A stretch of DNA of 63,599 nucleotides, filler included, from Basidiobolus meristosporus CBS 931.73 (lineage: Eukaryota; Fungi; Basidiobolomycota): assembly GCA_002104905.1 (NCBI GenBank). It is 4 parts of 4 records of this genome, joined end to end, with 100 filler letters (N's around TTAATTAATTAA, not from the genome) between each part and the next. Parts side by side here need not be neighbours in the genome. Positions count along the whole stretch, not along the records: positions 1 to 13,310 come from MCFE01001209.1; 3 more parts are not named here. The stretch is one strand, 5' to 3'. Positions 1 through 13,310 of this stretch are shown here, one piece after another (the stretch's first letter is position 1; each line of letters begins with the position of its first letter). The notes under the pieces are model-generated. The model was not told the DNA's origin, did not search any database, and saw only the letters and a program-made list of their open reading frames with translations. Position numbers and translations under genes: made by a program.

Positions 1-153
1 TATATGGTATTGAAATGGTAGAGATGGTAACACAGACCTAGGTCATGTGTCACGGGTACTGACGCGGGTACTTGCCTTATATAGATATATCTACTGATCA
101 CAAAGCTGAATAACATCTGGGATAACTAATGCTAATAACTAATCAGGGTAAAC

Positions 154-3100
154 TGTTGTAATTATTGAATTGTCACCTAAATATTCATGCTAACTTAGTC
201 ACATAGATCTTATTCTGTGATTAGCATTCTGTCCTGACTAGATTTCTTGTCGGGATTTACTTAGAATATTTTCACCAAATTATCAGGTACCCAGATTATT
301 ATTTTTCTCAAAGTCGTCCAAAAGACCCCAAACTTTGCACACATATTCTTGGGACCTTCCTTAACAAACTCTACACGTTTGTTTCCTCTACTTTATCAAA
401 AGTATAAATACCATACTTTTGATCAATAAATCTACAAGTGAATAACATGTAAATCTTCTAGTTCTCCACATCACTTCCAATACTCCTCAGAATATTGCAA
501 CAGGTTATGAGCCCCGAGCTTGCTGTCCTCTTGGTGTCTACTATGCTTTGGATCCTTTTCTGCTAGTCTGGAGAAAGACTTTCCGCACTATTGCTCCGCT
601 AAGGTTAAAGAAGACTACCGCTGCTAAAGGACTATGTTTATGAGGATATTGCTGTGGAGAAGAAGGCCTTGCCTTCAAAAGATGCCTTCAGTAACTATCC
701 AAGTTAGTTATGAAGAAGAGTCAATCAAACTGGCATGTAATTGTGTCAAGAAATATAGTATGTTGGTGCTCTACCACTACTGAAGAAAATTGCGTAATTC
801 CAGCAATTGAGGGTCCAGATCTACAATGAAATATACTGCAATATGTATTCATATGACCCCAATTGACTGTTAGACGAGCTCTTGGATAGGATATTATCCT
901 GAATTGCAAAAAAAAAAATATAGATCATTATTAATGATTGCCAGAGGAGGATTTTACCAAAAATCTATTGCCACTCAAAATACAGCTGAGAATGCAAATA
1001 CTGGAGCTGTTAGCCGCCATTCTGGACTATCTACTGATGGAAAAAGATCTCAGAAACAAGCTTCCTGAATTGTAAGGATCCCAATGATATATAATACATA
1101 TATATCCACCTGGAGTACGGATATGTACTACACAATCCATTAGAAGAATGCTATAATTGTATCAAGTGTTTTGATACTGAAACCAGTGTACCAGGAGCTA
1201 AATATGGAGCTGTTAGACGTGCTATCACTTTGTTTAAGTCTCAAAACAGTGGGAGAAAGTATTATACAAATTTAGCAAAATCAACTCATGAAGATTCTAC
1301 CGCCAGCCAAAGGAGTGACGCATATAATTGCAAGCCTGATTGGAGTATACAACCAAGCAACAGTTGGTCAGTACACAGCTAAGAGCCACTCAGAAGATAA
1401 CATAGTACTTTATACTTGTTATATATATATCACTTATTACAGTGGGAGAAAACACTTGGTGATATTTAACTTCTCTGGATCAGATCAGAAGAATTTTGAT
1501 TGATCAAGTCACCGCCAAGTTCTGCAACTCAAATTACTGATATATTGGAGTCTGATACCGAAGTATTGATGAAGCTAGCTATCAAATGCAGTTTATTTGA
1601 TCAAATTTGGTCAACTCTATCAAAAGTTATGAATGATCTAAGTGGATGCCGATTTTGATTATTTCACTCTCAAATAGTCAGATATTCTGGAACAATGATG
1701 TCATGGAGACTCTTGTGCTCAAAAACACCGTGGTCCCACCTGCAAGGAAGTCCAGAACCACCCCACAAAGGGAATTATCCCTGGGTCATCAGCAGAAAAA
1801 GAAAAGAAGAAAAAATGGAAAATACTACTACCGCAAACTAGGGTACTTCCCAAATGGTGCCAAAACTTATGTAAGCCATATTTGGACTATCTGGCAATGC
1901 AGATATGTTCTATGGAGCCTCTTGTACGAAGCTCTCAAGCTAGAAACCCCAGAAGAGCCTTGAAACTTCAACAGGATCTGTTAGATATTGTAGTATATAT
2001 TGGAACAGATTATTTAGTGCAGAAGTCTTGATATCTGCTGTCTATGGAGCTGAAAGAAAAAGGTGCAAGGATCAACCAGATGGTTTTTATGGATTCTGAA
2101 GACACTGAGAAGATCAGTTAGCCTTGGAAACCGAGCTCAAGGTTGAAAATAACTATCAGGAGAATAAGGATAATCAAAGCCCTTGTTAAGGAGAATCTCA
2201 CTTCTGGAAAAGCGCCAATCTCTATTCTACAAGTATATTCTGATAAGACAAAAGCAGCTGTATCAATCCAAATCAGTAGAAGCACTCTAAGAATAGCTAC
2301 CAAACAACCCATGGTGTTGTCCAATACCAAACCGGGTGAATCAAGAAGCAAATGGACTTTGAATCTACCGCATATGAAGTAATCAGTCCAAAGAAAGTTA
2401 TTGCTATTTAAAGAAGACAAAGATGACCATTCTAGATCATATTTGTGGATCTGAATCACTAACAGACGTGGTTCAAGTGGGAGCAGGCCATCCCAGCTCA
2501 GAGTTGAGCAAAAACCTTCTTTTTTTTTTGGCCATGTTATATGTGCCACAGTGCCAGGAAACAAGGATAATCCGGATCAGGCGTAAATGACAAAACCTTA
2601 ACTTGACCCAAAGTAGGTCACTATTTTTTACCTCATATAGCATCTATATGATGGAAGTAACTGTCCCTGAGCCTAATATGGACACACAGTGAAGTTGTCT
2701 AAATGGATTAGACTGTTGGCCGGAAATAAGGAAACTCCAGATCTGCCATAAATGACAAAACCTTAACTTGACCAAAAGTGGGTCAATTTTGCTCAAATAA
2801 GAAGCATTGGATAGCCCAGAGGCTATATACCATTATTACGATCTGTCAATTAGACTCAGCTTATTATTCAAGCCCGTACAACTGATCAAAGTTGATGATT
2901 AGTATTATGATCAGATCATTCAGATTTTTAGGCATATTACTAAGTAGATATGCATACTGAAATTCCAAGTTACTTGTTCTATTAAGTTGAACACAAATGC
3001 ATACACCTTTGGATAATATATTAGTCCAGTATGCAAAACAGTTAAATCTTATACGCTTATTACAGATTGCACACTCACAATATGTATTTATTACTCATGA

Positions 3101-3468
3101 ATATTTTGTTGAGTGGGAGTGTTGTAATTATTGAATTGTCACCTAAATATTCATGCTAACTTAGTCACATAGATCTTATTCTGTGATTAGCATTCTGTCC
3201 TGACTAGATTTCTTGTCGGGATTTACTTAGAATATTTTCACCAAATTATCAGGTACCCAGATTATTATTTTTCTCAAAGTCGTCCAAAAGACCCCAAACT
3301 TTGCACACATATTCTTGGGACCTTCCTTAACAAACTCTACACGTTTGTTTCCTCTACTTTATCAAAAGTATAAATACCATACTTTTGATCAATAAATCTA
3401 CAAGTGAATAACATGTAAATCTTCTAGTTCTCCACATCACTTCCAATACTCCTCAGAATATTGCAACA
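154..3468 (+). mobile_element. Non-autonomous Ty1/copia-type LTR element (3315 bp) with 5-bp TSD TAAAC
   Basis: 349-bp LTRs TGTTG...CAACA at 154-502 and 3120-3468, identical by eye; TAAAC at 149-153 and 3469-3473 (single copy at 6281-6285 in the empty LTR); PBS GGTTATGAGCCC at 503; PPT GAGTGGGAG at 3111-3119; no recognisable RT or integrase inside. Confidence 0.9.
503..514 (+). promoter_or_regulatory. Primer-binding site complementary to the initiator tRNA-Met anticodon arm (half-tRNA priming, copia/Ty5 type)
   Basis: GGTTATGAGCCC directly after the LTR is the reverse complement of GGGCTCATAACC; the same PBS occurs on the minus strand at 56323-56334. Confidence 0.8.
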
Positions 3469-3684
3469 TAAACATCATATGGGATAATACTGATAATATG
3501 GGCAAAAGAAGAATGGGATAATACTGATAAGATAAAATATGGATAAGTATATCATAATGACTATATGAATAAACTTGTCTGTGGGAGGTATGTTTACCCT
3601 ACCACATCCACCCCCCACTTGAGCTAAAAAGTTTCAGGGAACTTTTTAGCTAACCACTGTAAGTTTGGAGAACAAAGTGCTCTC

Positions 3685-5541
3685 TCAGTCTTCCTCAATG
3701 AAGCCACCTGTCCTTTCTTGAGATAGAAATCTACATGATGTCATTGATCGGATATTGTTTGAGTCCACACCACAGAAGGTTGCTGTTAGTCCTGGGCTCT
3801 CTGAGTATATAGTATACCATGCTGAACCATCTGGGTAGTTCACTGCAGTTGCTCTTGCTTTTACCTCCCATGGTCTTCCAAGAAGTAATTCAAAGTTAGC
3901 CTTTGCACATATGAATACTGGGATCTCATGGGGTATTCCTTCAATGATGAGAGGGAAGCTGTGAATAATTCCTAAAAGCTTTGATTGCCCTGAGTTGGCA
4001 TCCTTCATGCTCCAATTGATATTGGTGTCTATGGGCAATAAGTCTTTGCATGGTAGTTGTTTCCAAGCCTCCAAAGGCATCACACATATCTCAGATCCAC
4101 TGTCTATATGACATAGGATTTCTTGATTATGCACAGTTCCTGTAGTTGTTGCAGTTGCCACTGAGTAGTAGTGTTTCTGGCTTTGATGCAGCTTACTGAT
4201 ATCTTGGCTTCCTTGAACTGTCCTGACCTGGTTGCCTTGAGTTGCTTCAATTGGATGCTTTCTTATTCTGATATGCTCATCCAGAGTCTTTCTTACAGAT
4301 GGTGATACACTGAGTAGCTCTCCAACCTTGATTGATATGTTGCTTCCTAGTATATGACTTGTCAGAGCCTCTGGGGTACCATTTTGCTTGACTTTAGGCT
4401 GCATGTGGTAGTTGTTGGTCTTGGCAGACTCTTGTAGAATTAATGGGGGTGATGCTTTCTTCTCAATCACAACTTCTGGCTCACATCTTGGTACTTTTGT
4501 TGCTGGGCCTGGATTAGCCATTTTTTCAGGATGGTGTCTCTTTGAAGCATAAATTGAAGCTATATGATCTTGGGCCTCTCTGGGGTCCTCATAGTCAAAG
4601 TTCAGAACTTCAGCTGGATCAAAGTAGTCAGGATCTTCTTCTTCATGGAGGTGAACCTTTCTTGTATGAGAGGTGACTTGCTTGTAGTGAACTCTCATTC
4701 CTCCTTGTCCAAATGCTGTGGATAATTTGTCACCATGCTTACTGACTATGTATCCCTGAGGACTATATAGGACATCACCTGTGGATAGTAATGACTGAAG
4801 CTCTTGGCAATTTCTCTTGGAATGGTTGGCAGAGTCACACCACATGCATGTATATTTGACTTCTTTCTCTACTGGCTTCTGACCATATGCTTTGCTGGCA
4901 AGTAGCAAAGAGAGTTTCTCTAGTTGCTGTGTCAGCTCCTGAATTTGAGTGCTTTGATTGCTGGGATTAAGTATGTCTTGGCTATCTTGGTTTTGTCCTG
5001 GGCTTGAAAGAAGCTTTCTGATTGGTGAGGTTTCTTCAGGGGCAAGTAAAATCTGCTTAGCTAACTGAAATGCAGGCAGTGAACTCATAGCTTTCACAGT
5101 AGGATTGTTTTCAATCCTTCTAACCAGGCCTTCTGGTAGTGCTCTGAGCAGATAGGCAGATAAAGTCAGATCAGTGATAATGCCTTGGGCTTTCAGTGAC
5201 TCTCCAATTTGCTCAAGGCCACTCAAGTATTCTTTCAATGGTAGCAGCTTAAACTTGCTATAAGCAAAGTTCTCCAAGTCTTGAAGTGTGTAGTCAACTT
5301 GTCTCTCTCCATATTCATCAATCAAGTAGCTCTTCAAGAGGGTCCAATTTGTCAGCAGATCATTTCTTTCATATAATGAGAGCATGATCTCATCAGTGCT
5401 GTAGGGGGGCATCTCTTCAGCCATAATGGCCTCAGGTATTTTGTGGGCTCTGCAGAAAAGCTCCCACCTCTTGATGAAAGCTTTAACTTTGGTTCCATCA
5501 AAGAAAGGAGTTCCTTGCATTCCTGGTAAAGGTAGATCCAT
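3685..5541 (-). CDS. Gag-aspartic protease polyprotein, 618 aa, no RT/RNaseH/integrase (unit 1)
   Basis: Zinc knuckle CMWCDSANHSKRNC, protease HIDSGSEICV...LLLGRPW; stop lies 78 bp from the LTR. Confidence 0.9.
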   Translation of the reverse strand: MDLPLPGMQGTPFFDGTKVKAFIKRWELFCRAHKIPEAIMAEEMPPYSTDEIMLSLYERNDLLTNWTLLKSYLIDEYGERQVDYTLQDLENFAYSKFKLLPLKEYLSGLEQIGESLKAQGIITDLTLSAYLLRALPEGLVRRIENNPTVKAMSSLPAFQLAKQILLAPEETSPIRKLLSSPGQNQDSQDILNPSNQSTQIQELTQQLEKLSLLLASKAYGQKPVEKEVKYTCMWCDSANHSKRNCQELQSLLSTGDVLYSPQGYIVSKHGDKLSTAFGQGGMRVHYKQVTSHTRKVHLHEEEDPDYFDPAEVLNFDYEDPREAQDHIASIYASKRHHPEKMANPGPATKVPRCEPEVVIEKKASPPLILQESAKTNNYHMQPKVKQNGTPEALTSHILGSNISIKVGELLSVSPSVRKTLDEHIRIRKHPIEATQGNQVRTVQGSQDISKLHQSQKHYYSVATATTTGTVHNQEILCHIDSGSEICVMPLEAWKQLPCKDLLPIDTNINWSMKDANSGQSKLLGIIHSFPLIIEGIPHEIPVFICAKANFELLLGRPWEVKARATAVNYPDGSAWYTIYSESPGLTATFCGVDSNNIRSMTSCRFLSQERTGGFIEED

Positions 5542-5594
5542 GGTCTTGATAATTTGTTCTTTCTTAAGTCTTCTAGGGGCAGTTCAGTCAAACC

Positions 5595-5611
5595 CCCCAC
5601 GTTGGGTGCCA
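5595..5611 (-). promoter_or_regulatory. PBS TGGCACCCAACGTGGGG, tRNA-Lys(CTT)-like
   Basis: 4 nt from the LTR end; one mismatch to the classical Lys1,2 PBS TGGCGCCCAACGTGGGG; repeated at 8408-8424. Confidence 0.7.
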
Positions 5612-5615
5612 AATA

Positions 5616-6419
5616 TGTGGTGGTGTAGAGGTACTCCTGGGAGAAGCTACACAACTCAAGGTGTGTGAGGTGTCTGATGGGTGCAATAACCTCTGTGTCT
5701 AAACTGCTGGTGTCTTTGTCAATATGTCACTATGGTAAAAGCTCCTGCTTCTCTAGCTTCCTAGGTGCTCCAAGTGTCTCCAAAGGCCTCTGTGTGTCTT
5801 GTGCACTACCCTGAAAAGCTCCTTGATGGCAGGTCTGAGATGTACTGTTGAAGGCAGGTGCAGTGATCAACTGCTAATCAATAAGGTAGAAGTGTTACTG
5901 ATAGAAGGGATGATTTATTGATGAGGGATTGCTTTCCCTTAAATACTTTTCCTGATTGCCAAGTGATTACTAATGACAAGGTTCTAGAAGATTCTAGGTA
6001 TCAGTGGAATTCTTGATGACATCACTATGAGCTAAAAATATGCCGAGAATGTCCTGGAAGGTTCTAAAAGGCACAGCACTCTCAACCAATCAGGAATCAG
6101 TAGTCTGAAACCTGTGCAACATAGAAATACCATATATGGTATTGAAATGGTAGAGATGGTAACACAGACCTAGGTCATGTGTCACGGGTACTGACGCGGG
6201 TACTTGCCTTATATAGATATATCTACTGATCACAAAGCTGAATAACATCTGGGATAACTAATGCTAATAACTAATCAGGGTAAACATCATATGGGGATAA
6301 TACTGATAATATGGGCAAAAGAAGAATGGGATAATACTGATAAGATAAAATATGGATAAGTATATCATAATGACTATATGAATAAACTTGTCTGTGGGAG
6401 GTATGTTTACCCTACCACA
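5616..6419 (-). repeat. 804-bp LTR shared between the two tandem units
   Basis: TGTGG...CCACA termini; PPT (AAGTGGGGGGTGGA on minus) at 6420 on one side and PBS on the other. Confidence 0.92.
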
Positions 6420-6497
6420 TCCACCCCCCACTTGAGCTAAAAAGTTTCAGGGAACTTTTTAGCTAACCACTGTAAGTTTGGAGAACAAAGTGCTCTC

Positions 6498-8354
6498 TCA
6501 GTCTTCCTCAATGAAGCCACCTGTCCTTTCTTGAGATAGAAATCTACATGATGTCATTGATCGGATATTGTTTGAGTCCACACCACAGAAGGTTGCTGTT
6601 AGTCCTGGGCTCTCTGAGTATATAGTATACCATGCTGAACCATCTGGGTAGTTCACTGCAGTTGCTCTTGCTTTTACTTCCCATGGTCTTCCAAGAAGTA
6701 ATTCAAAGTTAGCCTTTGCACAAATGAATACTGGGATCTCATGGGGTATTCCTTCAATGATGAGAGGGAAGCTGTGAATAATTCCTAAAAGCTTTGATTG
6801 CCCTGAGTTGGCATCCTTCATGCTCCAATTGATATTGGTGTCTATGGGCAATAAGTCTTTGCATGGTAGTTGTTTCCAAGCCTCCAAAGGCATCACACAT
6901 ATCTCAGATCCACTGTCTATATGACATAGGATTTCTTGATTATGCACAGTTCCTGTAGTTGTTGCAGTTGCCACTGAGTAGTAGTGTTTCTGGCTTTGAT
7001 GCAGCTTACTGATATCTTGGCTTCCTTGAACTGTCCTGACCTGGTTGCCTTGAGTTGCTTCAATTGGATGCTTTCTTATTCTGATATGCTCATCCAGAGT
7101 CTTTCTTACAGATGGTGATACACTGAGTAGCTCTCCAACCTTGATTGATATGTTGCTTCCTAGTATATGACTTGTCAGAGCCTCTGGGGTACCATTTTGC
7201 TTGACTCTAGGCTGCATGTGGTAGTTGTTGGCCTTGGCAGACTCTTGTAAAATTAATGGGGGTGATGCTTTCTTCTCAATCACAACTTCTGGCTCACATC
7301 TTGGTACTTTTGTTGCTGGGCCTGGATTAGCCATTTTTTCAGGATGGTGTCTCTTTGAAGCATAAATTGAAGCTATATGATCTTGGGCCTCTCTGGGGTC
7401 CTCATAGTCAAAGTTCAGAACTTCAGCTGGATCAAAGTAGTCAGGATCTTCTTCTTCATGGAGGTGAACCTTTCTTGTATGAGAGGTGACTTGCTTGTAG
7501 TGAACTCTCATTCCTCCTTGTCCAAATGCTGTGGATAATTTGTCACCATGCTTACTGACTATGTATCCCTGAGGACTATATAGGACATCACCTGTGGATA
7601 GTAATGACTGAAGCTCTTGGCAATTTCTCTTGGAATGGTTGGCAGAGTCACACCACATGCATGTATATTTGACTTCTTTCTCTACTGGCTTCTGACCATA
7701 TGCTTTGCTGGCAAGTAGCAAAGAGAGTTTCTCTAGTTGCTGTGTCAGCTCCTGAATTTGAGTGCTTTGATTGCTGGGATTAAGTATGTCTTGGCTATCT
7801 TGGTTTTGTTCTGGGCTTGAAAGAAGCTTTCTGATTGGTGAGGTTTCTTCAGGGGCAAGTAGAATCTGCTTAGCTAACTGAAATGCAGGCAGTGAACTCA
7901 TAGCTTTCACAGTAGGATTGTTTTCAATCCTTCTCACCAGGCCTTCTGGTAGTGCTCTGAGCAGATAGGCAGATAAAGTCAGATCAGTGATAATGCCTTG
8001 GGCTTTCAGTGACTCTCCAATTTGCTCAAGGCCACTCAAGTATTCTTTCAATGGTAGCAGCTTAAACTTGCTATAAGCAAAGTTCTCCAAGTCTTGAAGT
8101 GTGTAGTCAACTTGTCTCTCTCCATATTCATCAATCAAGTAGCTCTTCAAGAGGGTCCAATTTGTCAGCAGATCATTTCTTTCATATAATGAGAGCATGA
8201 TCTCATCAGTGCTGTAGGGGGGCATCTCTTCAGCCATAATGGCCTCAGGTATTTTGTGGGCTCTGCAGAAAAGCTCCCACCTCTTGATGAAAGCTTTAAC
8301 TTTGGTTCCATCAAAGAAAGGAGTTCCTTGCATTCCTGGTAAAGGTAGATCCAT
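6498..8354 (-). CDS. Gag-aspartic protease polyprotein, 618 aa (unit 2)
   Basis: Differs from unit 1 at three residues seen (G/E, T/A, K/R); repeat period 2813 bp. Confidence 0.9.
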   Translation of the reverse strand: MDLPLPGMQGTPFFDGTKVKAFIKRWELFCRAHKIPEAIMAEEMPPYSTDEIMLSLYERNDLLTNWTLLKSYLIDEYGERQVDYTLQDLENFAYSKFKLLPLKEYLSGLEQIGESLKAQGIITDLTLSAYLLRALPEGLVRRIENNPTVKAMSSLPAFQLAKQILLAPEETSPIRKLLSSPEQNQDSQDILNPSNQSTQIQELTQQLEKLSLLLASKAYGQKPVEKEVKYTCMWCDSANHSKRNCQELQSLLSTGDVLYSPQGYIVSKHGDKLSTAFGQGGMRVHYKQVTSHTRKVHLHEEEDPDYFDPAEVLNFDYEDPREAQDHIASIYASKRHHPEKMANPGPATKVPRCEPEVVIEKKASPPLILQESAKANNYHMQPRVKQNGTPEALTSHILGSNISIKVGELLSVSPSVRKTLDEHIRIRKHPIEATQGNQVRTVQGSQDISKLHQSQKHYYSVATATTTGTVHNQEILCHIDSGSEICVMPLEAWKQLPCKDLLPIDTNINWSMKDANSGQSKLLGIIHSFPLIIEGIPHEIPVFICAKANFELLLGRPWEVKARATAVNYPDGSAWYTIYSESPGLTATFCGVDSNNIRSMTSCRFLSQERTGGFIEED

Positions 8355-8428
8355 GGTCTTGATAATTTGTTCTTTCTTAAGTCTTCTAGGGGCAGTTCAG
8401 TCAAACCCCCCACGTTGGGTGCCAAATA

Positions 8429-9232
8429 TGTGGTGGTGTAGAGGTACTCCTGGGAGAAGCTACACAACTCAAGGTGTGTGAGGTGTCTGATGGGTGCAAT
8501 AACCTCTGTGTCTAAACTGCTGGTGTCTTTGTCAATATGTCACTATGGTAAAAGCTCCTGCTTCTCTAGCTTCCTAGGTGCTCCAAGTGTCTCCAAAGGC
8601 CTCTGTGTGTCTTGTGCACTACCCTGAAAAGCTCCTTGATGGCAGGTCTGAGATGTACTGTTGAAGGCAGGTGCAGTGATCAACTGCTAATCAATAAGGT
8701 AGAAGTGTTACTGATAGAAGGGATGATTTATTGATGAGGGATTGCTTTCCCTTAAATACTTTTCCTGATTGCCAAGTGATTACTAATGACAAGGTTCTAG
8801 AAGATTCTAGGTATCAGTGGAATTCTTGATGACATCACTATGAGCTAAAAATATGCCAAGAATGTCCTGGAAGGTTCTAAAAGGCACAGCACTCTCAACC
8901 AATCAGGAATCAGTAGTCTGAAACCTGTGCAACATAGAAATACCATATATGGTATTGAAATGGTAGGGATGGTAACACAGACCTAGGTCATGTGTCACGG
9001 GTACTGACGCGGGTACTTGCCTTATATAGATACATCTACTGATCACAAAGCTGAATAACATCTGGGATAACTAATGCTAATAACTAATCAGGGTAAACAT
9101 CATATGGGGATAATACTGATAATATGGGCAAAAGAAGAATGGGATAATACTGATAACATAAAATATGGATAAGTATATCATAATGACTATATGAATAAAC
9201 TTGTCTGTGGGAGGTATGTTTACCCTACCACA
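8429..9232 (-). repeat. 804-bp 5' LTR of the tandem gag-PR array
   Basis: Near-identical to 5616-6419; PBS adjacent at 8408-8424. Confidence 0.92.
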
Positions 9233-9848
9233 GCGGTTTCCTGGGAGTGTCCTGTGGTCTGGGGTTGGAAGTTCAGGTAGCAGCAGGTAGCAGTGATCAC
9301 ACTAATCAACAAGTCGGTATATTGATAAAAGGGATGATGATTTATTGTTGAGGGATAGCCTCCCTTATATACTTTTCTTACTGGCTAAGTGATTACTAAT
9401 CATGGTGTTCTAGAAGGTTCAGGATATCAATAGAAATCTTAATGACATCAGAATGACCTAAGAATGTTCTAAGTAGGTGCCGGAAGGTTCTAAGAGGCAC
9501 AGCACATCCAACCAATCAGGAATCAGTACTCTGAAACCTGTGTAACATGGGGATACCATATATGGTATGGAAATGGTAGGGATGGTGACACGGGCTGATC
9601 ATGTGTCACGGGTACTGGCGCGGGTACTTGCCTAATTTAGAAGTACTTATAGCTAGTAATCTTACATAAAGTGAGGGGTAACTTATGCAATAAGGTAAGC
9701 AGGTGTGATAGTCAACCGGCTTATGGGATAGTACTGATTGGGTAAGACAAATGGGATAAAACTAAAATAAGTGTAGTAGAGATATAGGGAAGTAGAAAAT
9801 AAGGGAATGAGCACATCTGTCAGTGGGTGTCACTGTCACCCCACTACA
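9233..9848 (-). repeat. Interrupted 3' LTR of a related pol-bearing Ty3/gypsy element
   Basis: Diverged but alignable to the 804-bp LTR (CCAATCAGGAATCAGTA, GTGTCACGGGTACTG); begins TGTAGTGG at 9848 after PPT GAGAGGGGGGTGGA (9849-9862). Confidence 0.8.
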
Positions 9849-9887
9849 TCCACCCCCCTCTCAGCTTTGAACTTGGGTCAAAGCAAA

Positions 9888-12800
9888 CTAATCTTGATGT
9901 GCAAAATTCCTATGCTTGAATAACTTAAGTCGATTTCCAGCAACTGGTGCTCTCAACTGGGTGTTGTCAAGCTCAGATATGTAATAACTTCCATTTCCAA
10001 TTACTTTGGAAATGAGGTAGGGGCCAGTCCATTTGTTGTCAAACTTCCGACTCCATTGCTTGTCCAAGGTAGAATCATAGAGTAATACTGGGTCTCCTAG
10101 TGATAGTGGTTTTGGCCTTGTTGGGTGTGATTTGTCAAAGGGCACCTTGTTCTTTAGTCGTGTGTCCTTAAGTTGTTCAGCAGCTCTGCTAATATTCAAG
10201 TCATGGTGATCAAGTTGCTGTATGCGAGTTGCAAGGAGGTCTTCAGTCTGCATGTTGGATCTCCAATTCAATGAGCTCCAAGTGACTGTGTTTAACTCAA
10301 CTGGTAGTATGCAGTCATGTCCATAGAGTAGCTTGAATGGCGATAATCCAGTTGTTCTCTTGGTAGTAATTCTATCTGCCCAGAGTGCTAGATGTAATTG
10401 CTGTGGCCACAGTGTTGTGTTATTCTCACAAGTCTTGACAAGAGAGTTCACCAATGGTCCATGTCCTCTCTCTATCATTCCATTGGCTTGAGGGTGGTAA
10501 GCTGTTGTAAAAGCAATGTGTATCTTGTACTTTGAGCACAACTCCTGGATCATTTGGGATGTCATCTCTCCTCTGTCAGCAACAAACTGCCGGATGCAGC
10601 CAAATCTGCAGATAATGTCTTCAAGTATAAATCTCCATATGGTATGGCTCTTGTTGTTGGGCAGGGCTCGAGCCTCTGCCCATCCACTAAGGTCATCTCT
10701 AGCAACAATCAGGTACTTTTTTGATCCAGCTGTTGGCATGTGGACAAGGTCAATGCCAACCTTTTGCCACAGACAGATTGTGTAAGTAGGATGCAGTGGT
10801 TCTTCATAACGCTTGGAGGATCTCTTCTGGCAGGCTACACATGACTCAACAAAGTGTTGGATATCATAGTACATGTTTTCCCAGTAGTACCTCTGAGCTG
10901 TAGTGTTGTATGTGGCTTCTCGTCCTCTATGTCCTCCTGGTTCTCCTAGGTGGATACTTGTCATGATGTTCAGTTGCTCTTGAGGGGTAGTGACTACTCT
11001 TCTTGGCATAAGTCCAGGTTTCACTTGCTTAAAGAGAAGATCATCTTTAAGATAGTAGTGGTGTGCCTTCTTCCTGAGTTTTCTAAACTCCTGAATATCC
11101 ATCCAACTAGGTTTCTTAAGTGTCCTTAGATATTCCTTGATCAGACTCCAGGTAGTTCTCTCTTGGTCTTTGATGGCAATCTGTCGGATCTCTGCATCAA
11201 TAATATCATCAAAGTGAGGGTCCAAGTCTTCAAATAATTGTGGTCCCTTCCTGGAGAGTGCATCAGCCACAACATTTGTCTTGCCAGGGATATGTTTGAC
11301 CTCAAAGTCAAACATTTTCAGCCATGCCATCCATCGGTTTGTGGCATCATCAGGTAGGTCAGGCTTGTTGATCATTCCTATAAGTGGCTTGGCATCTGTC
11401 TCCAGGATAAAATGTGTCATGTAGAGTTGTGACTTCAGTTTCCTCAGCATCTTCACAACTCCTAGTAGTTCTCTCTTAATCTGTGAGTATCTTTGCTCTC
11501 TAGGAGAGAATAGGCAGCTCTCATATCTGCAGGCATAGCGGTTGCCATCTTCATCATCTTGTCCAAGTAGTGCTCCAGCTCCTATAGGGCTTGCATCCAC
11601 TGTCAATATAGGTGGGCATTTTGTGTTTTGATAGTCAAGAGGTCTTAGAACTGGTGGAGATACTAAGGCCTCTTTCAGTAACTGCATGGCTTCTTCTTGC
11701 TCTTCTCCCCAGATAAATGGGGTATTCTTTCTCTGTAGTCGGTAGATTGGTTCTGCTATCTCAGAAAGTCTTGGGATCCAGATCCTAAAGAACCCACAAG
11801 CTGCCACAAAGCCACGAGCTTGTGTTAGATTTGTGGGGGTAGGCCAGTTGCATATCTTTTGTGTCTTGGAATCTCCAGGTGAGCGACCAAAGGTATTGCA
11901 TTTTTGTCCAACAATGGATATCTCTGATACACCAAAGCTGCTTTTCTCACCACTGATGGTGAGTCCAGCTTCTTCAATGGCTCCTAATATGGCATCATTG
12001 TCTGAAATACGATCATAGACAAACTTTCTGACTCCAGGCATGACTTCAGTGGTGTCCCGGGTTTTTGGTCCTTTGATGCCTATGTCATCAACAAAGACAG
12101 CAAGTTTCTCAGGTATAAACTGATACAGCACATTTACCATGCATCTCTGGAACTGAGCCACGGAGTTTGTAGCCCCTTGACTGAGTCTTGTCATCCTTAA
12201 CAGTCCAAATGGTGTCTGTAGTGCAAACATATCTCTTGATGTCTCATCAAGGGGAATCTGGTCATATCCTGAGTAGAGATCATATGTTGAGTAGATGGAG
12301 TGGCCACTAAAGCTTTCTGCAAAGTCATCAATAGATGGAGGTATAGCAGCATCTCTGATAGTGACAGCATTTGCAGGTTGCATGTCTTGAATGAATCGGA
12401 GCTTTCCATTCTTCTTTTTGGTCACAAACCATCTGTTAGCATAGGGTCCATGGCAAGGTTCTAGGATACCAGCTTCTATCTTCTTCTTAAGTAGGTCATG
12501 CACATCAGCTTGGAGTCCTCTGGGCAGTGGGTAAGGCTTAAATGACCAGGGTGTGTGGGGCACTGTATGAATCTGGATAGGTTTTTCAACCGATGTCTTT
12601 AAGAGTCCCATCTCCTTGTCATTATATGAGAAGACCTTATCATGCCTTTTCAAGGTCTCCTTGAATAATAGTATCTCCTCTGGTGTTAGGTTTCCATCAC
12701 CAATGATAAGTTGCTTAAGTCTCTCAGGTGTAAGTCGTATATTATCTGATGTTTCTTCTGGTGGTCTAATGTAATCAGCAGGTCAAGATCCATCAGTCAG

Positions 12801-13310
12801 TGGGGTAAGTGATGGTCTAATCTTCTGTTCTACTGTCTTGTATTTTGTTCAAACCATAGCTGTTTGCTCCTGTATACCTAATGAGCAGCTCCAAATGTTG
12901 GGGTGTATATTGTCAGGCTCTTCATCTTCTTCCATAACAAGATGTGCCTTCTGGCAAGCAGTATGTGTCCTCTTATTGTTGGGTGTTACACCACAGAAGG
13001 TTGACTGCAGTCCTGGATTGGATCCTTGTATGGTGTACCATACTGACCCACTGGAATAGTTGGTAGTTGTAGCCTTAGTACTGGTTTCCCATGGTCTACC
13101 TAGCAGAAGGTCAAAGTTTGCCTTCTGGCAGATGAAGAGGGGAGGCCAGACCTTGATTCCTTGTACCTCAATAGGGAACTTGTGCACTACACCGTAGAGT
13201 GGACTAGATCCTGAGTTTGCATCAGTCATGTTCCATCCAATATCTCTATCAACAGGCAGTAGCTCCTTGCTTCTAAGTGTCTTCCAGAAGTCTAGCGGCA
13301 TAACACAAAT
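9888..13310 (-). pseudogene. Ty3/gypsy pol (protease C-terminus, RT, RNase H, integrase), 5' end lost at the contig gap, two in-frame TGA stops
   Basis: RT VFVDD, RNaseH TVDAS, integrase HHCC plus GIDLVH/ADRG/GMIERG and GPY; ORFs 12849-13301 and 9888-12653 share a frame with TGA at 12849-12851 and 12783-12785. Confidence 0.9.

What the first reader, a model, noticed from the sequence alone, without database searches (positions are those of the whole stretch)
1..9232. Tandem LTR-gagPR-LTR-gagPR-LTR array: a pol-less but coding retroelement parked in its probable helper
Seen: 2813-bp units with a 2009-bp internal region carrying PBS, an intact 618-aa Gag-protease ORF and PPT, with LTRs shared between units. 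The array abuts the interrupted LTR (9233-9848) of a related element whose protease aligns with it (MPLEAWKQL...LLLGRPW versus MPLDFWKTL...LLLGRPW; FIEED-stop versus VMEEDEEP) and which carries RT, RNaseH and integrase. Established: plant TR-GAG elements and tandem-array TRIMs have a similar architecture. Inference: a semi-autonomous parasite that supplies its own capsid and protease and borrows Pol, with tandems arising from LTR-LTR recombination or circle integration.
Basis: partly seen in the sequence, partly recalled or inferred. Interest (0 to 1): 0.76.

Follow-up and report, generated by a model that had tools for sequence, protein, structure and literature searches.

The report
Tandem pol-less Gag-protease LTR retrotransposon
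Two head-to-tail copies of a small LTR retrotransposon that still encodes its capsid and protease but has lost reverse transcriptase and integrase sit inside the end of an older, broken relative; both the tandem layout and the 'Gag-protease only' design are already known from other genomes, so this is a tidy new example and not a new kind of element.

Summary
The structure is real. On the minus strand there are 804-bp LTRs (TG..CA) alternating with 2009-bp internal regions (period 2813 bp). Each internal region has a PBS, an intact 618-aa ORF and a PPT. The ORF has a capsid-like fold, a CCHC knuckle and a retropepsin fold with DSG, and no RT, RNase H or integrase.

- The leftmost LTR is only partly in the window. 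It is split by a young 3315-bp non-coding LTR element (154-3468, identical 349-bp LTRs, TSD TAAAC).
- The neighbouring 'helper' copy has two in-frame TGA stops inside conserved coding sequence between PR and RT, so this copy is defective.
- The neighbour is a different family: 58% amino-acid identity in PR, although the LTR core is about 80% identical.

The array's intact LTR end joins the neighbour's 3' LTR out of register, which fits integrase-mediated insertion.

The two units differ at 8 ORF sites, 5 synonymous and 3 non-synonymous (P about 0.05). This is a weak hint of selection on Gag-PR.

Copy number, TSD of the array and mobility could not be tested.

'Semi-autonomous' GAG-Pro gypsy elements (wheat Sabrina_SA, WHAM) and three-LTR tandems are published. 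Verdict: new member of a known kind.

The parts
8429..9232 (-). Array LTR1, the 5'-most in element orientation. 804 bp, TG..CA, terminal inverted repeat TGTGGT/ACCACA. TATA-like GTATTTAAGGG at 8749-8759 and CAATAAATCATC (poly(A) signal) at 8722-8733.
8408..8424 (-). PBS-like site of unit A (TGGCACCCAACGTGGGG), 4 nt after the LTR. The primer tRNA was not identified.
6498..8354 (-). Gag-protease ORF of unit A, 618 aa. Capsid-like helical domain at aa 1-178 (7821-8354), CCHC knuckle at aa 232-245 (7620-7661), retropepsin domain at about aa 460-600 with D480-S-G and LLLGRPW (6555-6977), TGA stop.
6436..6463 (-). Perfect 11-bp inverted repeat (hairpin) just upstream of the PPT of unit A. The same feature in unit B is at 3623-3650.
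6420..6433 (-). Polypurine tract of unit A (AAGTGGGGGGTGGA), abutting LTR2.
5616..6419 (-). Array LTR2, shared: it is the 3' LTR of unit A and the 5' LTR of unit B. It differs from LTR1 at 4 of 804 positions.
5595..5611 (-). PBS-like site of unit B.
3685..5541 (-). Gag-protease ORF of unit B, 618 aa. It differs from unit A by 8 nt: 5 synonymous and 3 amino-acid changes.
3607..3620 (-). Polypurine tract of unit B.
3469..3606 (-). Array LTR3, first 138 bp in element orientation. 3469-3473 (TAAAC) is one copy of the nested element's target-site duplication.
154..3468 (+). Nested non-coding LTR element, 3315 bp. Its 349-bp LTRs (154-502 and 3120-3468) are 100% identical and have TG..CA ends. Each LTR has a TATA and an AATAAA in + orientation. 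PBS-like site at 503-520, purine tract at 3107-3119, 5-bp TSD TAAAC (149-153 and 3469-3473). No ORF above 152 aa, and no similarity to the other elements.
1..153 (-). Array LTR3, continuation (LTR positions 134-286), cut by the edge of the piece. It is identical to LTR2 over these bases.
9233..9848 (-). Neighbour element's 3' LTR. It starts TGTAGTGGGG after its PPT and lacks about the last 188 bp (U5 end). Its core is about 80% identical to the array LTR. The array's intact LTR end is joined to it out of register at 9232/9233.
9849..9862 (-). Neighbour's polypurine tract (GAGAGGGGGGTGGA). A 7-bp-stem hairpin lies just upstream at 9864-9884.
9888..12653 (-). Neighbour's open RT, RNase H and integrase (H2C2 + core) reading frame, 921 codons as listed. 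It has no chromodomain.
12783..12851 (-). Two in-frame TGA stops of the neighbour (12849-12851 and 12783-12785). They bracket a conserved coding stretch between PR and RT. Relatives have sense codons at both places.
12852..13310 (-). Neighbour's protease C-terminal part (LLLGRPW), in the same frame as RT. Its upstream part and gag lie outside the piece.

Best explanation
Window 1-9232 (minus the nested insert) holds at least two tandem units of a 3.6-kb non-autonomous Ty3/gypsy-type LTR retrotransposon.

Shown:
- The element keeps all its cis signals: 804-bp LTRs, PBS and PPT.
- It keeps one ORF for capsid, nucleocapsid knuckle and aspartic protease.
- Everything from about 15 codons after the protease to about 65 nt before the PPT is gone, including RT, RNase H and integrase.
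- The order of events is as follows. An older autonomous-type relative (9233-13310) was hit in U5 of its 3' LTR by the Gag-PR element or array, because the array's complete TG terminus joins the neighbour LTR out of register. A non-coding LTR element then inserted into the array's last visible LTR, with identical LTRs and a 5-bp TSD.

Inferred:
- Like the published 'semi-autonomous' GAG-Pro elements, it would be transcribed from its LTR and would make its own Gag and protease.
- It would depend on RT, RNase H and integrase supplied in trans by intact members of a related autonomous family.
- The partnership signal is that the LTR promoter core, the PPT and the LTR start are far more alike between the two families than their protease genes are.
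- The three-LTR tandem arose either during reverse transcription or cDNA recombination from two slightly different RNAs, or by unequal LTR-LTR exchange after insertion. The mostly synonymous differences between units lean weakly to the first.
For: Repeat geometry and near-identity of the units.

LTR ends, PBS, PPT and junctions.

The ORF is Gag-PR:
- CCHC knuckle and DSG motif.
- A profile of 40 homologues hits the DDI1 retropepsin (E 1e-10) and the Ty3 protease (E 2e-9), with weak capsid and nucleocapsid hits.
- The AF2 model has a retropepsin fold with target-normalised TM about 0.77.
- The N-terminal model (pLDDT 84.6) has dArc1, PNMA2, Arc, Ty3 and copia capsids as its top fold matches.

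No RT, RNase H or integrase: the Pfam scan, and only 78 nt lie between the ORF's stop and the LTR.

Relatives carry the same Gag-PR at the front of 1656- to 1703-aa Gag-PR-RT-RH-INT polyproteins, so the short form is derived.

The neighbour has RT, RNase H and integrase, but with two stops in conserved sequence.

The LTR core is about 80% identical, against 58% nucleotide identity in PR and 38% at third codon positions.

Between the units there are 5 synonymous and 3 non-synonymous differences, pN/pS 0.17.

The nested element has a TSD and identical LTRs.

Published analogues: PMC9744471, PMC6097303, PMC4350172, PMC11899658, PMC7215508, PMC13570524.
Against: - Only this one locus is available. 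No second, dispersed copy, no TSD for the array (its left end is outside the window) and no expression data exist, so mobility and trans-complementation are inference.
- Intact ORFs are expected by chance at 0.4% divergence. About 74% of simulations with 8 random substitutions give no stop.
- The synonymous excess rests on 8 sites and reaches only P about 0.05 once transition bias is allowed for.
- The only visible candidate partner copy is itself broken and only 58% identical in PR.
- The high LTR-core similarity could reflect shared promoter constraint without any partnership.
- The primer tRNA for the PBS was not identified.
- An assembly artefact (the LTR loop traversed twice, threading two alleles) cannot be excluded from the sequence alone.
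Confidence: 0.6

Rival explanations
1. Dead-on-arrival local derivative. One copy of a full-length element lost its pol by an internal deletion at this locus. It was then duplicated in place by unequal LTR-LTR crossing-over between sister chromatids or homologues. It never propagated, and its Gag-PR has no role.
For: No other copy was found in any collection searched. Unequal exchange is a standard route to three-LTR structures (PMC7215508, PMC11899658). LTR and internal divergences are similar (0.5% and 0.4%). Open ORFs are expected by chance at this low divergence.
Against: Differences between in-place duplicates should be about 70-78% non-synonymous. Observed are 3 of 8 (P 0.015 to 0.07). 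The deletion is 'clean': the whole Gag-PR ORF, the PBS, the PPT and the pre-PPT hairpin are kept. The failure to find copies says little, because the source genome is not in the searchable collections (nearest Gag-PR relative about 30% identity).
Confidence: 0.22
2. Assembly artefact. There is really a single LTR-gagPR-LTR element. The assembler went round the LTR loop twice, placing two alleles or two paralogous copies in series.
For: The units are 99.56% identical and the period equals LTR plus internal region exactly, which is the geometry of a collapsed-LTR loop. No read data are available.
Against: There are 13 differences spread over LTR and ORF. The nested 3.3-kb insertion is present in only one of the three LTRs. 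The outer junctions are distinct. Tandem LTR elements are common real structures (PMC11899658).
Confidence: 0.1
3. Host-domesticated Gag-protease gene, in the manner of Arc, PEG10 or DDI1-type co-option, that happens to be tandemly duplicated.
For: The ORFs are intact and the differences are biased to synonymous sites. The capsid fold resembles the domesticated Arc and PNMA2 proteins.
Against: It keeps complete, nearly identical LTRs with a PBS and a PPT. It sits in a nest of transposons. The units are separated by a shared LTR, so each 'gene' is an element. It is very young. It has no orthologues above about 30% identity anywhere.
Confidence: 0.03

Closest known systems
'Semi-autonomous' GAG-Pro Ty3/gypsy elements of wheat: RLG_Sabrina_SA and RLG_WHAM, with RLG_Wilma as autonomous partner (PMC9744471). 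Also the Fatima subfamilies with only gag and protease ORFs (PMC6097303).
   Same: An LTR element whose only ORF encodes GAG followed directly by a protease. RT and integrase are absent. It is presumed to supply Gag and PR itself and to borrow Pol from a related autonomous family.
   Different: This element is much smaller (3.6 kb against 6.6-8.3 kb). Its nearest relatives are fungal, not plant. Copy number, population structure and co-evolution with a partner are documented for the wheat families and are unknown here.
TR-GAG elements of plants (PMC4350172)
   Same: Length under 4 kb, with LTRs, PBS, PPT and a single ORF with GAG and a zinc knuckle. Non-autonomous.
   Different: TR-GAGs were defined as lacking aspartic protease similarity, whereas this ORF has a clear retropepsin domain. 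The type element TR-GAG1 carries a Copia-superfamily GAG domain and all are from angiosperms, whereas this one is Ty3/gypsy-type with fungal relatives.
Tandem LTR retrotransposon structures with shared internal LTRs: rice and other plants, Cassandra and other TRIMs, sugar beet non-autonomous families, BARE1 (PMC11899658, PMC7215508, PMC13570524)
   Same: Alternating LTR and internal region, most often three LTRs and two internal regions, as seen here.
   Different: In those studies the flanking TSD could be checked. Here the left end lies outside the window.
Ty3/gypsy elements of Kickxellomycotina fungi (Smittium, Furculomyces, Dimargaris), as predicted proteins only
   Same: They are the best named matches. 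Gag-PR is 25-31% identical with E down to 2e-40, RT is 48-55% identical, and the Zn-knuckle, post-knuckle motif, DUF4100-like stretch and PR layout are shared.
   Different: Those proteins continue into RT, RNase H and integrase where complete (for example the unnamed 1656- and 1703-aa polyproteins). They are too distant to be the same family.

Membership tests
LTR retrotransposon, Ty3/gypsy type (Metaviridae-like) | Direct long terminal repeats ending TG..CA with short inverted termini | tested here: met
   804-bp LTRs with TGTGGT..ACCACA ends. Two complete copies and one partial copy, at least 99.5% identical.
LTR retrotransposon, Ty3/gypsy type (Metaviridae-like) | Primer binding site after the 5' LTR and polypurine tract before the 3' LTR | tested here: met
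   TGG-initiated 17-nt site 4 nt after the LTR, and AAGTGGGGGGTGGA abutting the LTR. The matching tRNA could not be identified: no tRNA gene lies in the window and the source genome is not available.
LTR retrotransposon, Ty3/gypsy type (Metaviridae-like) | Target-site duplication flanking the insertion | not testable with these tools
   The right flank is ACCGC in element orientation (GCGGT on the + strand, 9233-9237). The left end of the array is outside the window. The nested element does show a 5-bp TSD.
LTR retrotransposon, Ty3/gypsy type (Metaviridae-like) | Gag with retroelement capsid fold and CCHC nucleocapsid knuckle | tested here: met
   CMWCDSANHSKRNC at aa 232-245. The N-terminal AF2 model (pLDDT 84.6) has dArc1, PNMA2, Arc, Ty3 and copia capsids as top Foldseek hits, with probability up to 0.99 but weak E-values of 0.02 to 3. 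Profile hits to capsids are only E about 0.08.
LTR retrotransposon, Ty3/gypsy type (Metaviridae-like) | Retropepsin-type aspartic protease with D-S/T-G | tested here: met
   D480-S-G and LLLGRPW. Profile against PDB: DDI1 E 1e-10, Ty3 PR E 2e-9. Fold match has target-normalised TM about 0.77.
LTR retrotransposon, Ty3/gypsy type (Metaviridae-like) | Pol order RT, RNase H, integrase (autonomous members) | tested here: not met
   The array units have no RT, RNase H or integrase, so they are non-autonomous derivatives. The neighbour has RT, then RNase H, then integrase in gypsy order. Relatives of the Gag-PR carry that order too.
Semi-autonomous GAG-Pro LTR elements (Sabrina_SA / WHAM type) | Single intact ORF with GAG followed by protease, with RT and INT absent | tested here: met
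Semi-autonomous GAG-Pro LTR elements (Sabrina_SA / WHAM type) | A propagating population of copies that co-evolves with an autonomous partner family | not testable with these tools
The exact proteins are absent from the collection. DNA and protein scans found nothing. Indirect hints only: LTR core about 80% identical to the neighbour family and a synonymous bias between the two units.
TR-GAG (Chaparro et al. 2015) | Under 4 kb, with LTR, PBS, PPT and one ORF with GAG | tested here: met
   A single unit with both LTRs is 3617 bp. ORF and cis signals are as above.
TR-GAG (Chaparro et al. 2015) | No similarity to aspartic protease, RT, RNase H or integrase | tested here: not met
   A protease domain is clearly present. 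It is therefore not filed as TR-GAG in the strict sense (definition in PMC4350172).
Tandem LTR-retrotransposon structure | Alternating LTR and internal region with internal LTRs shared between units | tested here: met
   LTR1, internal A, LTR2, internal B, LTR3 (partial), with period 2813 bp.
Tandem LTR-retrotransposon structure | Physical reality confirmed by reads spanning the array | not testable with these tools
   No read data are available. The 13 unit-specific differences and an insertion in only one LTR argue for reality.

The most novel reading that the evidence does not exclude
This could be the first described 'semi-autonomous' Gag-protease Ty3/gypsy family in an early-diverging (zoopagomycete-like) fungus. 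It would be kept functional by selection. Its three-LTR tandem would have been made during reverse transcription from two co-packaged, slightly different RNAs. Its LTR promoter core would have been acquired by recombination with the helper lineage inside shared virus-like particles. That would make the roughly 80% identical LTR core a molecular record of co-packaging between parasite and helper.
Probability: 0.15. Interest if true: 0.5.

Novelty: new member of a known kind. Interest (0 to 1): 0.3.

Why it matters
If the element proves multi-copy and under selection, it would extend the 'division of labour' model of LTR retrotransposons beyond large plant genomes. In that model, Gag and protease come from abundant semi-autonomous elements and Pol comes from a few autonomous ones. 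The new setting would be a lineage whose nearest relatives are early-diverging fungi.

It would also give a compact 3.6-kb system for asking whether Gag acts preferentially in cis.

As it stands, it is mainly a well-resolved annotation of a three-layer transposon nest. Its practical value is for repeat annotation of the source genome.

Tried and rejected
Searches for other copies or the source genome all failed:
- The exact proteins are not in the 15-billion-protein collection.
- The word search with Gag-PR found nothing.
- An exact-pattern scan with the shared PPT plus LTR-start motif found nothing in metagenome, prokaryote-genome or viral contigs.
With the two-sequence alignment it found no relative in metagenome contigs.

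Other negative results:
- Rfam found no RNA family, so there is no Cassandra-like 5S or tRNA-derived LTR. ARAGORN found no tRNA.
- The nested element has no coding remnant or similarity to the other two elements.

Ideas considered and rejected:
- The ORF's stop is the lineage's native ORF1 stop. Relatives read on from PR into RT without a break.
- TGA is a sense codon in the source organism. No in-frame TGA occurs in about 1700 other open codons.
- The array joined the neighbour by homologous LTR-LTR recombination. The junction is out of register: array LTR position 1 meets neighbour LTR position 616.
- Gene conversion from the adjacent neighbour LTR into LTR1. The four LTR1/LTR2 differences show no consistent bias towards the neighbour's state.

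The pre-PPT hairpins are not more stable than shuffled controls.

The neighbour was read through only with X at its two stops.
Full report
**1. What is in the sequence**

Self-comparison of 1-13310 shows that 3469-6419 repeats at 6281-9232, with 99.56% identity and a period of 2813 bp. It also shows that 1-153 equals 6133-6285 and 8946-9098.

All coding potential is on the minus strand. There are two 618-aa ORFs (8354 to 6498 and 5541 to 3685), a 921-codon ORF (12653 to 9888) and a 150-aa ORF running towards the right edge.

Read in element (minus) orientation, the repeat unit has two parts:
- An 804-bp LTR that starts TGTGGT and ends ACCACA (8429-9232 and 5616-6419).
- A 2009-bp internal region.

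The internal region begins, 4 nt after the LTR, with TGGCACCCAACGTGGGG, a PBS-like site. It ends with AAGTGGGGGGTGGA, a polypurine tract that abuts the next LTR.

The LTR carries a TATA-like box. A CAATAAATCATC motif, whose AATAAA lies 26 nt downstream of the TATA box, is the likely poly(A) signal. I infer a long U3 of about 500 bp, a very short R and a U5 of about 280 bp.

**2.

The leftmost LTR is not whole. Only 3469-3606 and 1-153 belong to it, which is 286 of 804 bp, and the edge of the piece cuts it.

Between those two pieces lies an unrelated element (154-3468, + strand, 3315 bp). It has:
- 349-bp LTRs that are 100% identical, with TG..CA ends.
- Its own TATA and AATAAA.
- A purine tract before the 3' LTR.
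- A perfect 5-bp target duplication, TAAAC (149-153 and 3469-3473). The uninterrupted LTR copies read ...GGGTAAACATCAT... at this point.

This element has no long ORF and no similarity to the other elements. It is a young LARD- or TRIM-like non-autonomous element. The array therefore has at least two internal regions and three LTRs, and its true left end is unknown.

**3. What the 618-aa ORF encodes**

Pfam alone gives only sub-threshold hits (DUF4100, Asp_protease). The word search found nothing and the exact sequences are not in the protein collection.

The exhaustive HMMER search found 684 relatives with E at or below 1e-3. The best had E 2e-40 at 25-31% identity. The named ones are all from zoopagomycete fungi: Smittium, Furculomyces, Dimargaris and Basidiobolus.

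In complete relatives the homologous part is the N-terminus of Gag-PR-RT-RNaseH-integrase polyproteins of 1656 and 1703 aa.

A 40-sequence profile matches the retropepsin domains of DDI1 (E 1e-10) and of Ty3 (E 2e-9). It matches capsids and nucleocapsid knuckles only weakly.

Structure prediction supports the same reading:
- The full-length AF2 model has mean pLDDT 76.6.
- Its C-terminal domain has a retropepsin fold, with target-normalised TM about 0.77 to DDI1 and HIV protease.
- A separate model of residues 1-300 (pLDDT 84.6) has dArc1, PNMA2, Arc, Ty3 and copia capsids as its best structural matches. Probabilities reach 0.99 but E-values are weak.

The protein also has the CCHC knuckle (aa 232-245), D480-S-G and LLLGRPW. 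Together these show that it is Gag (CA-NC) plus protease.

Only 78 nt separate its TGA from the LTR, so RT, RNase H and integrase are absent. Relatives read on from PR into RT, so the short ORF is a derived deletion form and not a native ORF1.

**4. The neighbour**

The stretch 9233-9848 is a homologous LTR. It has the same kind of PPT (GAGAGGGGGGTGGA) and a similar start (TGTAGTGGGG against TGTGGTAGGG). Identity is about 80% across LTR positions 201-500, which hold the promoter core, the TATA box and the poly(A) signal. Identity is about 50-58% elsewhere.

This LTR stops about 188 bp short of its expected end. There the array's complete LTR terminus begins (…ACCGC|TGTGGTAGGG…). The junction is out of register (neighbour LTR position 616 meets array LTR position 1). 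This fits integrase-mediated insertion into U5 of the neighbour's 3' LTR and does not fit homologous LTR-LTR exchange (inference).

Upstream lies an RT, RNase H and integrase frame. Further up, in the same frame, lies the protease C-terminus.

Two in-frame TGA codons (12849-12851 and 12783-12785) interrupt this frame. Read with X at the stops, the stretch aligns without gaps to Dimargaris and Smittium proteins. Those proteins have sense codons at both places, and they conserve the segment between the stops. This copy is therefore defective.

The neighbour's protease is 58% identical to the array's in protein. Over the same 120 codons nucleotide identity is also 58%, and third codon positions are only 38% identical, which means they are saturated. 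The neighbour is thus a related family, not the parent, and this copy cannot be the helper.

Its RT is 48-55% identical to Kickxellomycotina elements. Over the full length of Pol the best match is 47%. The source organism is not represented in the collections. A fungal origin, possibly early-diverging, is a lead and not a result.

**5. Do the data bear on 'semi-autonomous parasite'?**

Two observations do.

First, the two units differ at 12 substitutions and 1 indel. Eight of the substitutions lie in the ORF: 5 synonymous and 3 non-synonymous, giving pN/pS 0.17. Under neutrality 3 or fewer non-synonymous changes out of 8 has P = 0.015 with equal rates. With the observed transition bias P is about 0.05. 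This is weak. If real, the two pol-less units diverged while Gag-PR was under selection. That favours two source RNAs or copies (template switching, read-through or cDNA recombination) over a neutral in-place duplication. LTR2 and LTR3 are identical over the visible 286 bp apart from one 1-bp indel, and LTR1 differs from both at 3 sites. This pattern is compatible with either route.

Second, the non-coding LTR core is far more similar between the two families than synonymous sites of their proteases are. This points either to strong shared constraint on the promoter or to an exchange of LTR sequence between the lineages. An exchange would need co-packaging. Both readings fit a partner relationship, and neither proves it.

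The intactness of the ORFs is not evidence by itself at 0.4% divergence.

**6. Comparison with what is known**

Three-LTR tandems with shared LTRs are common:
- 266 were found in a rice pangenome (PMC11899658).
- 97 were found in sugar beet non-autonomous families, 65 of them with three LTRs (PMC13570524).
- Cassandra and BARE1 also form them (PMC7215508).

Those authors leave the choice between unequal recombination and tandem cDNA open.

Gag-only TR-GAGs were defined as lacking protease similarity (PMC4350172), so the element fails that strict definition.

The closest published concept is the 'semi-autonomous' GAG-Pro gypsy families RLG_Sabrina_SA and RLG_WHAM, with RLG_Wilma as partner (PMC9744471). 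The Fatima subfamilies with gag and protease ORFs are similar (PMC6097303).

**7. Limits**

- All scans for related loci were empty.
- Copy number, the TSD of the array, long-read support, expression and the identity of a functional helper remain untested.
- The contig is not human-like. No spliced model was involved. 

**8. Verdict**

This is a real, well-resolved nest of three LTR elements. Its centrepiece is a tandem Gag-protease-only Ty3/gypsy derivative. It is a new member of a known kind and of modest interest. The trans-mobilisation model is plausible but unproven.

Noticed in passing
154-3468 (+): A young non-coding LTR element is nested in the array's leftmost LTR. It is 3315 bp with 349-bp identical LTRs and the TSD TAAAC. 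Its PBS-like site (GGTTATGAGCCCCGAGC, 503-519) does not start with the usual TGG and differs from the array's PBS, so it belongs to another family.
   Followed up: partly
12849-12851 and 12783-12785 (-): The neighbour has two in-frame TGA codons 22 codons apart between protease and RT. They bracket a motif (TKYK..KIRP) that is conserved in Dimargaris and Smittium elements, and relatives have sense codons at both places.
   Followed up: yes
6436-6463, 3623-3650 and 9864-9884 (-): Both families have a hairpin 1-2 nt upstream of the PPT. The stems differ in sequence (11-bp stem GCTAAAAAGTT in the array, 7-bp stem GCTTTGA in the neighbour) and both loops start with CCC. With only two sequences this is not significant against shuffles.
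   Followed up: partly
8722-8759, 5909-5946 and 9336-9372 (-): In all these LTRs AATAAA lies only about 26 nt downstream of the TATA-like box. The poly(A) signal would then sit at or before the transcription start, R would be very short, and the signal would act only in the 3' LTR.
   Followed up: no
LTR positions 201-500: 8733-9032 against about 9350-9648: The non-coding LTR core of the two families is about 80% identical, while their protease genes are 58% identical in nucleotides with saturated third positions. Different histories (LTR exchange) or strong promoter constraint could explain this.
   Followed up: partly
7509-7596 (-), aa 253-282 of the ORF: Directly after the zinc knuckle lies a conserved, confidently modelled motif (G.V.....G.I....G.......G.GG) with two short strands. 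It is shared with the fungal relatives and has no assigned function. The sub-threshold DUF4100 match lies further on, at aa 371-428.
   Followed up: no
9764-9807: A 16-bp tandem repeat (2.8 copies, AAAATAAGGGAAGTAG on the + strand) lies in the distal U3 of the neighbour's LTR.
   Followed up: no
2553-2620 and 2719-2785 (+): An 85% identical 68-bp direct repeat lies inside the nested element's internal region.
   Followed up: no
3484 against 6296 / 9109: The only LTR2/LTR3 difference is a 1-bp change in the length of a G-run, 11 bp from the nested element's insertion site.
   Followed up: no
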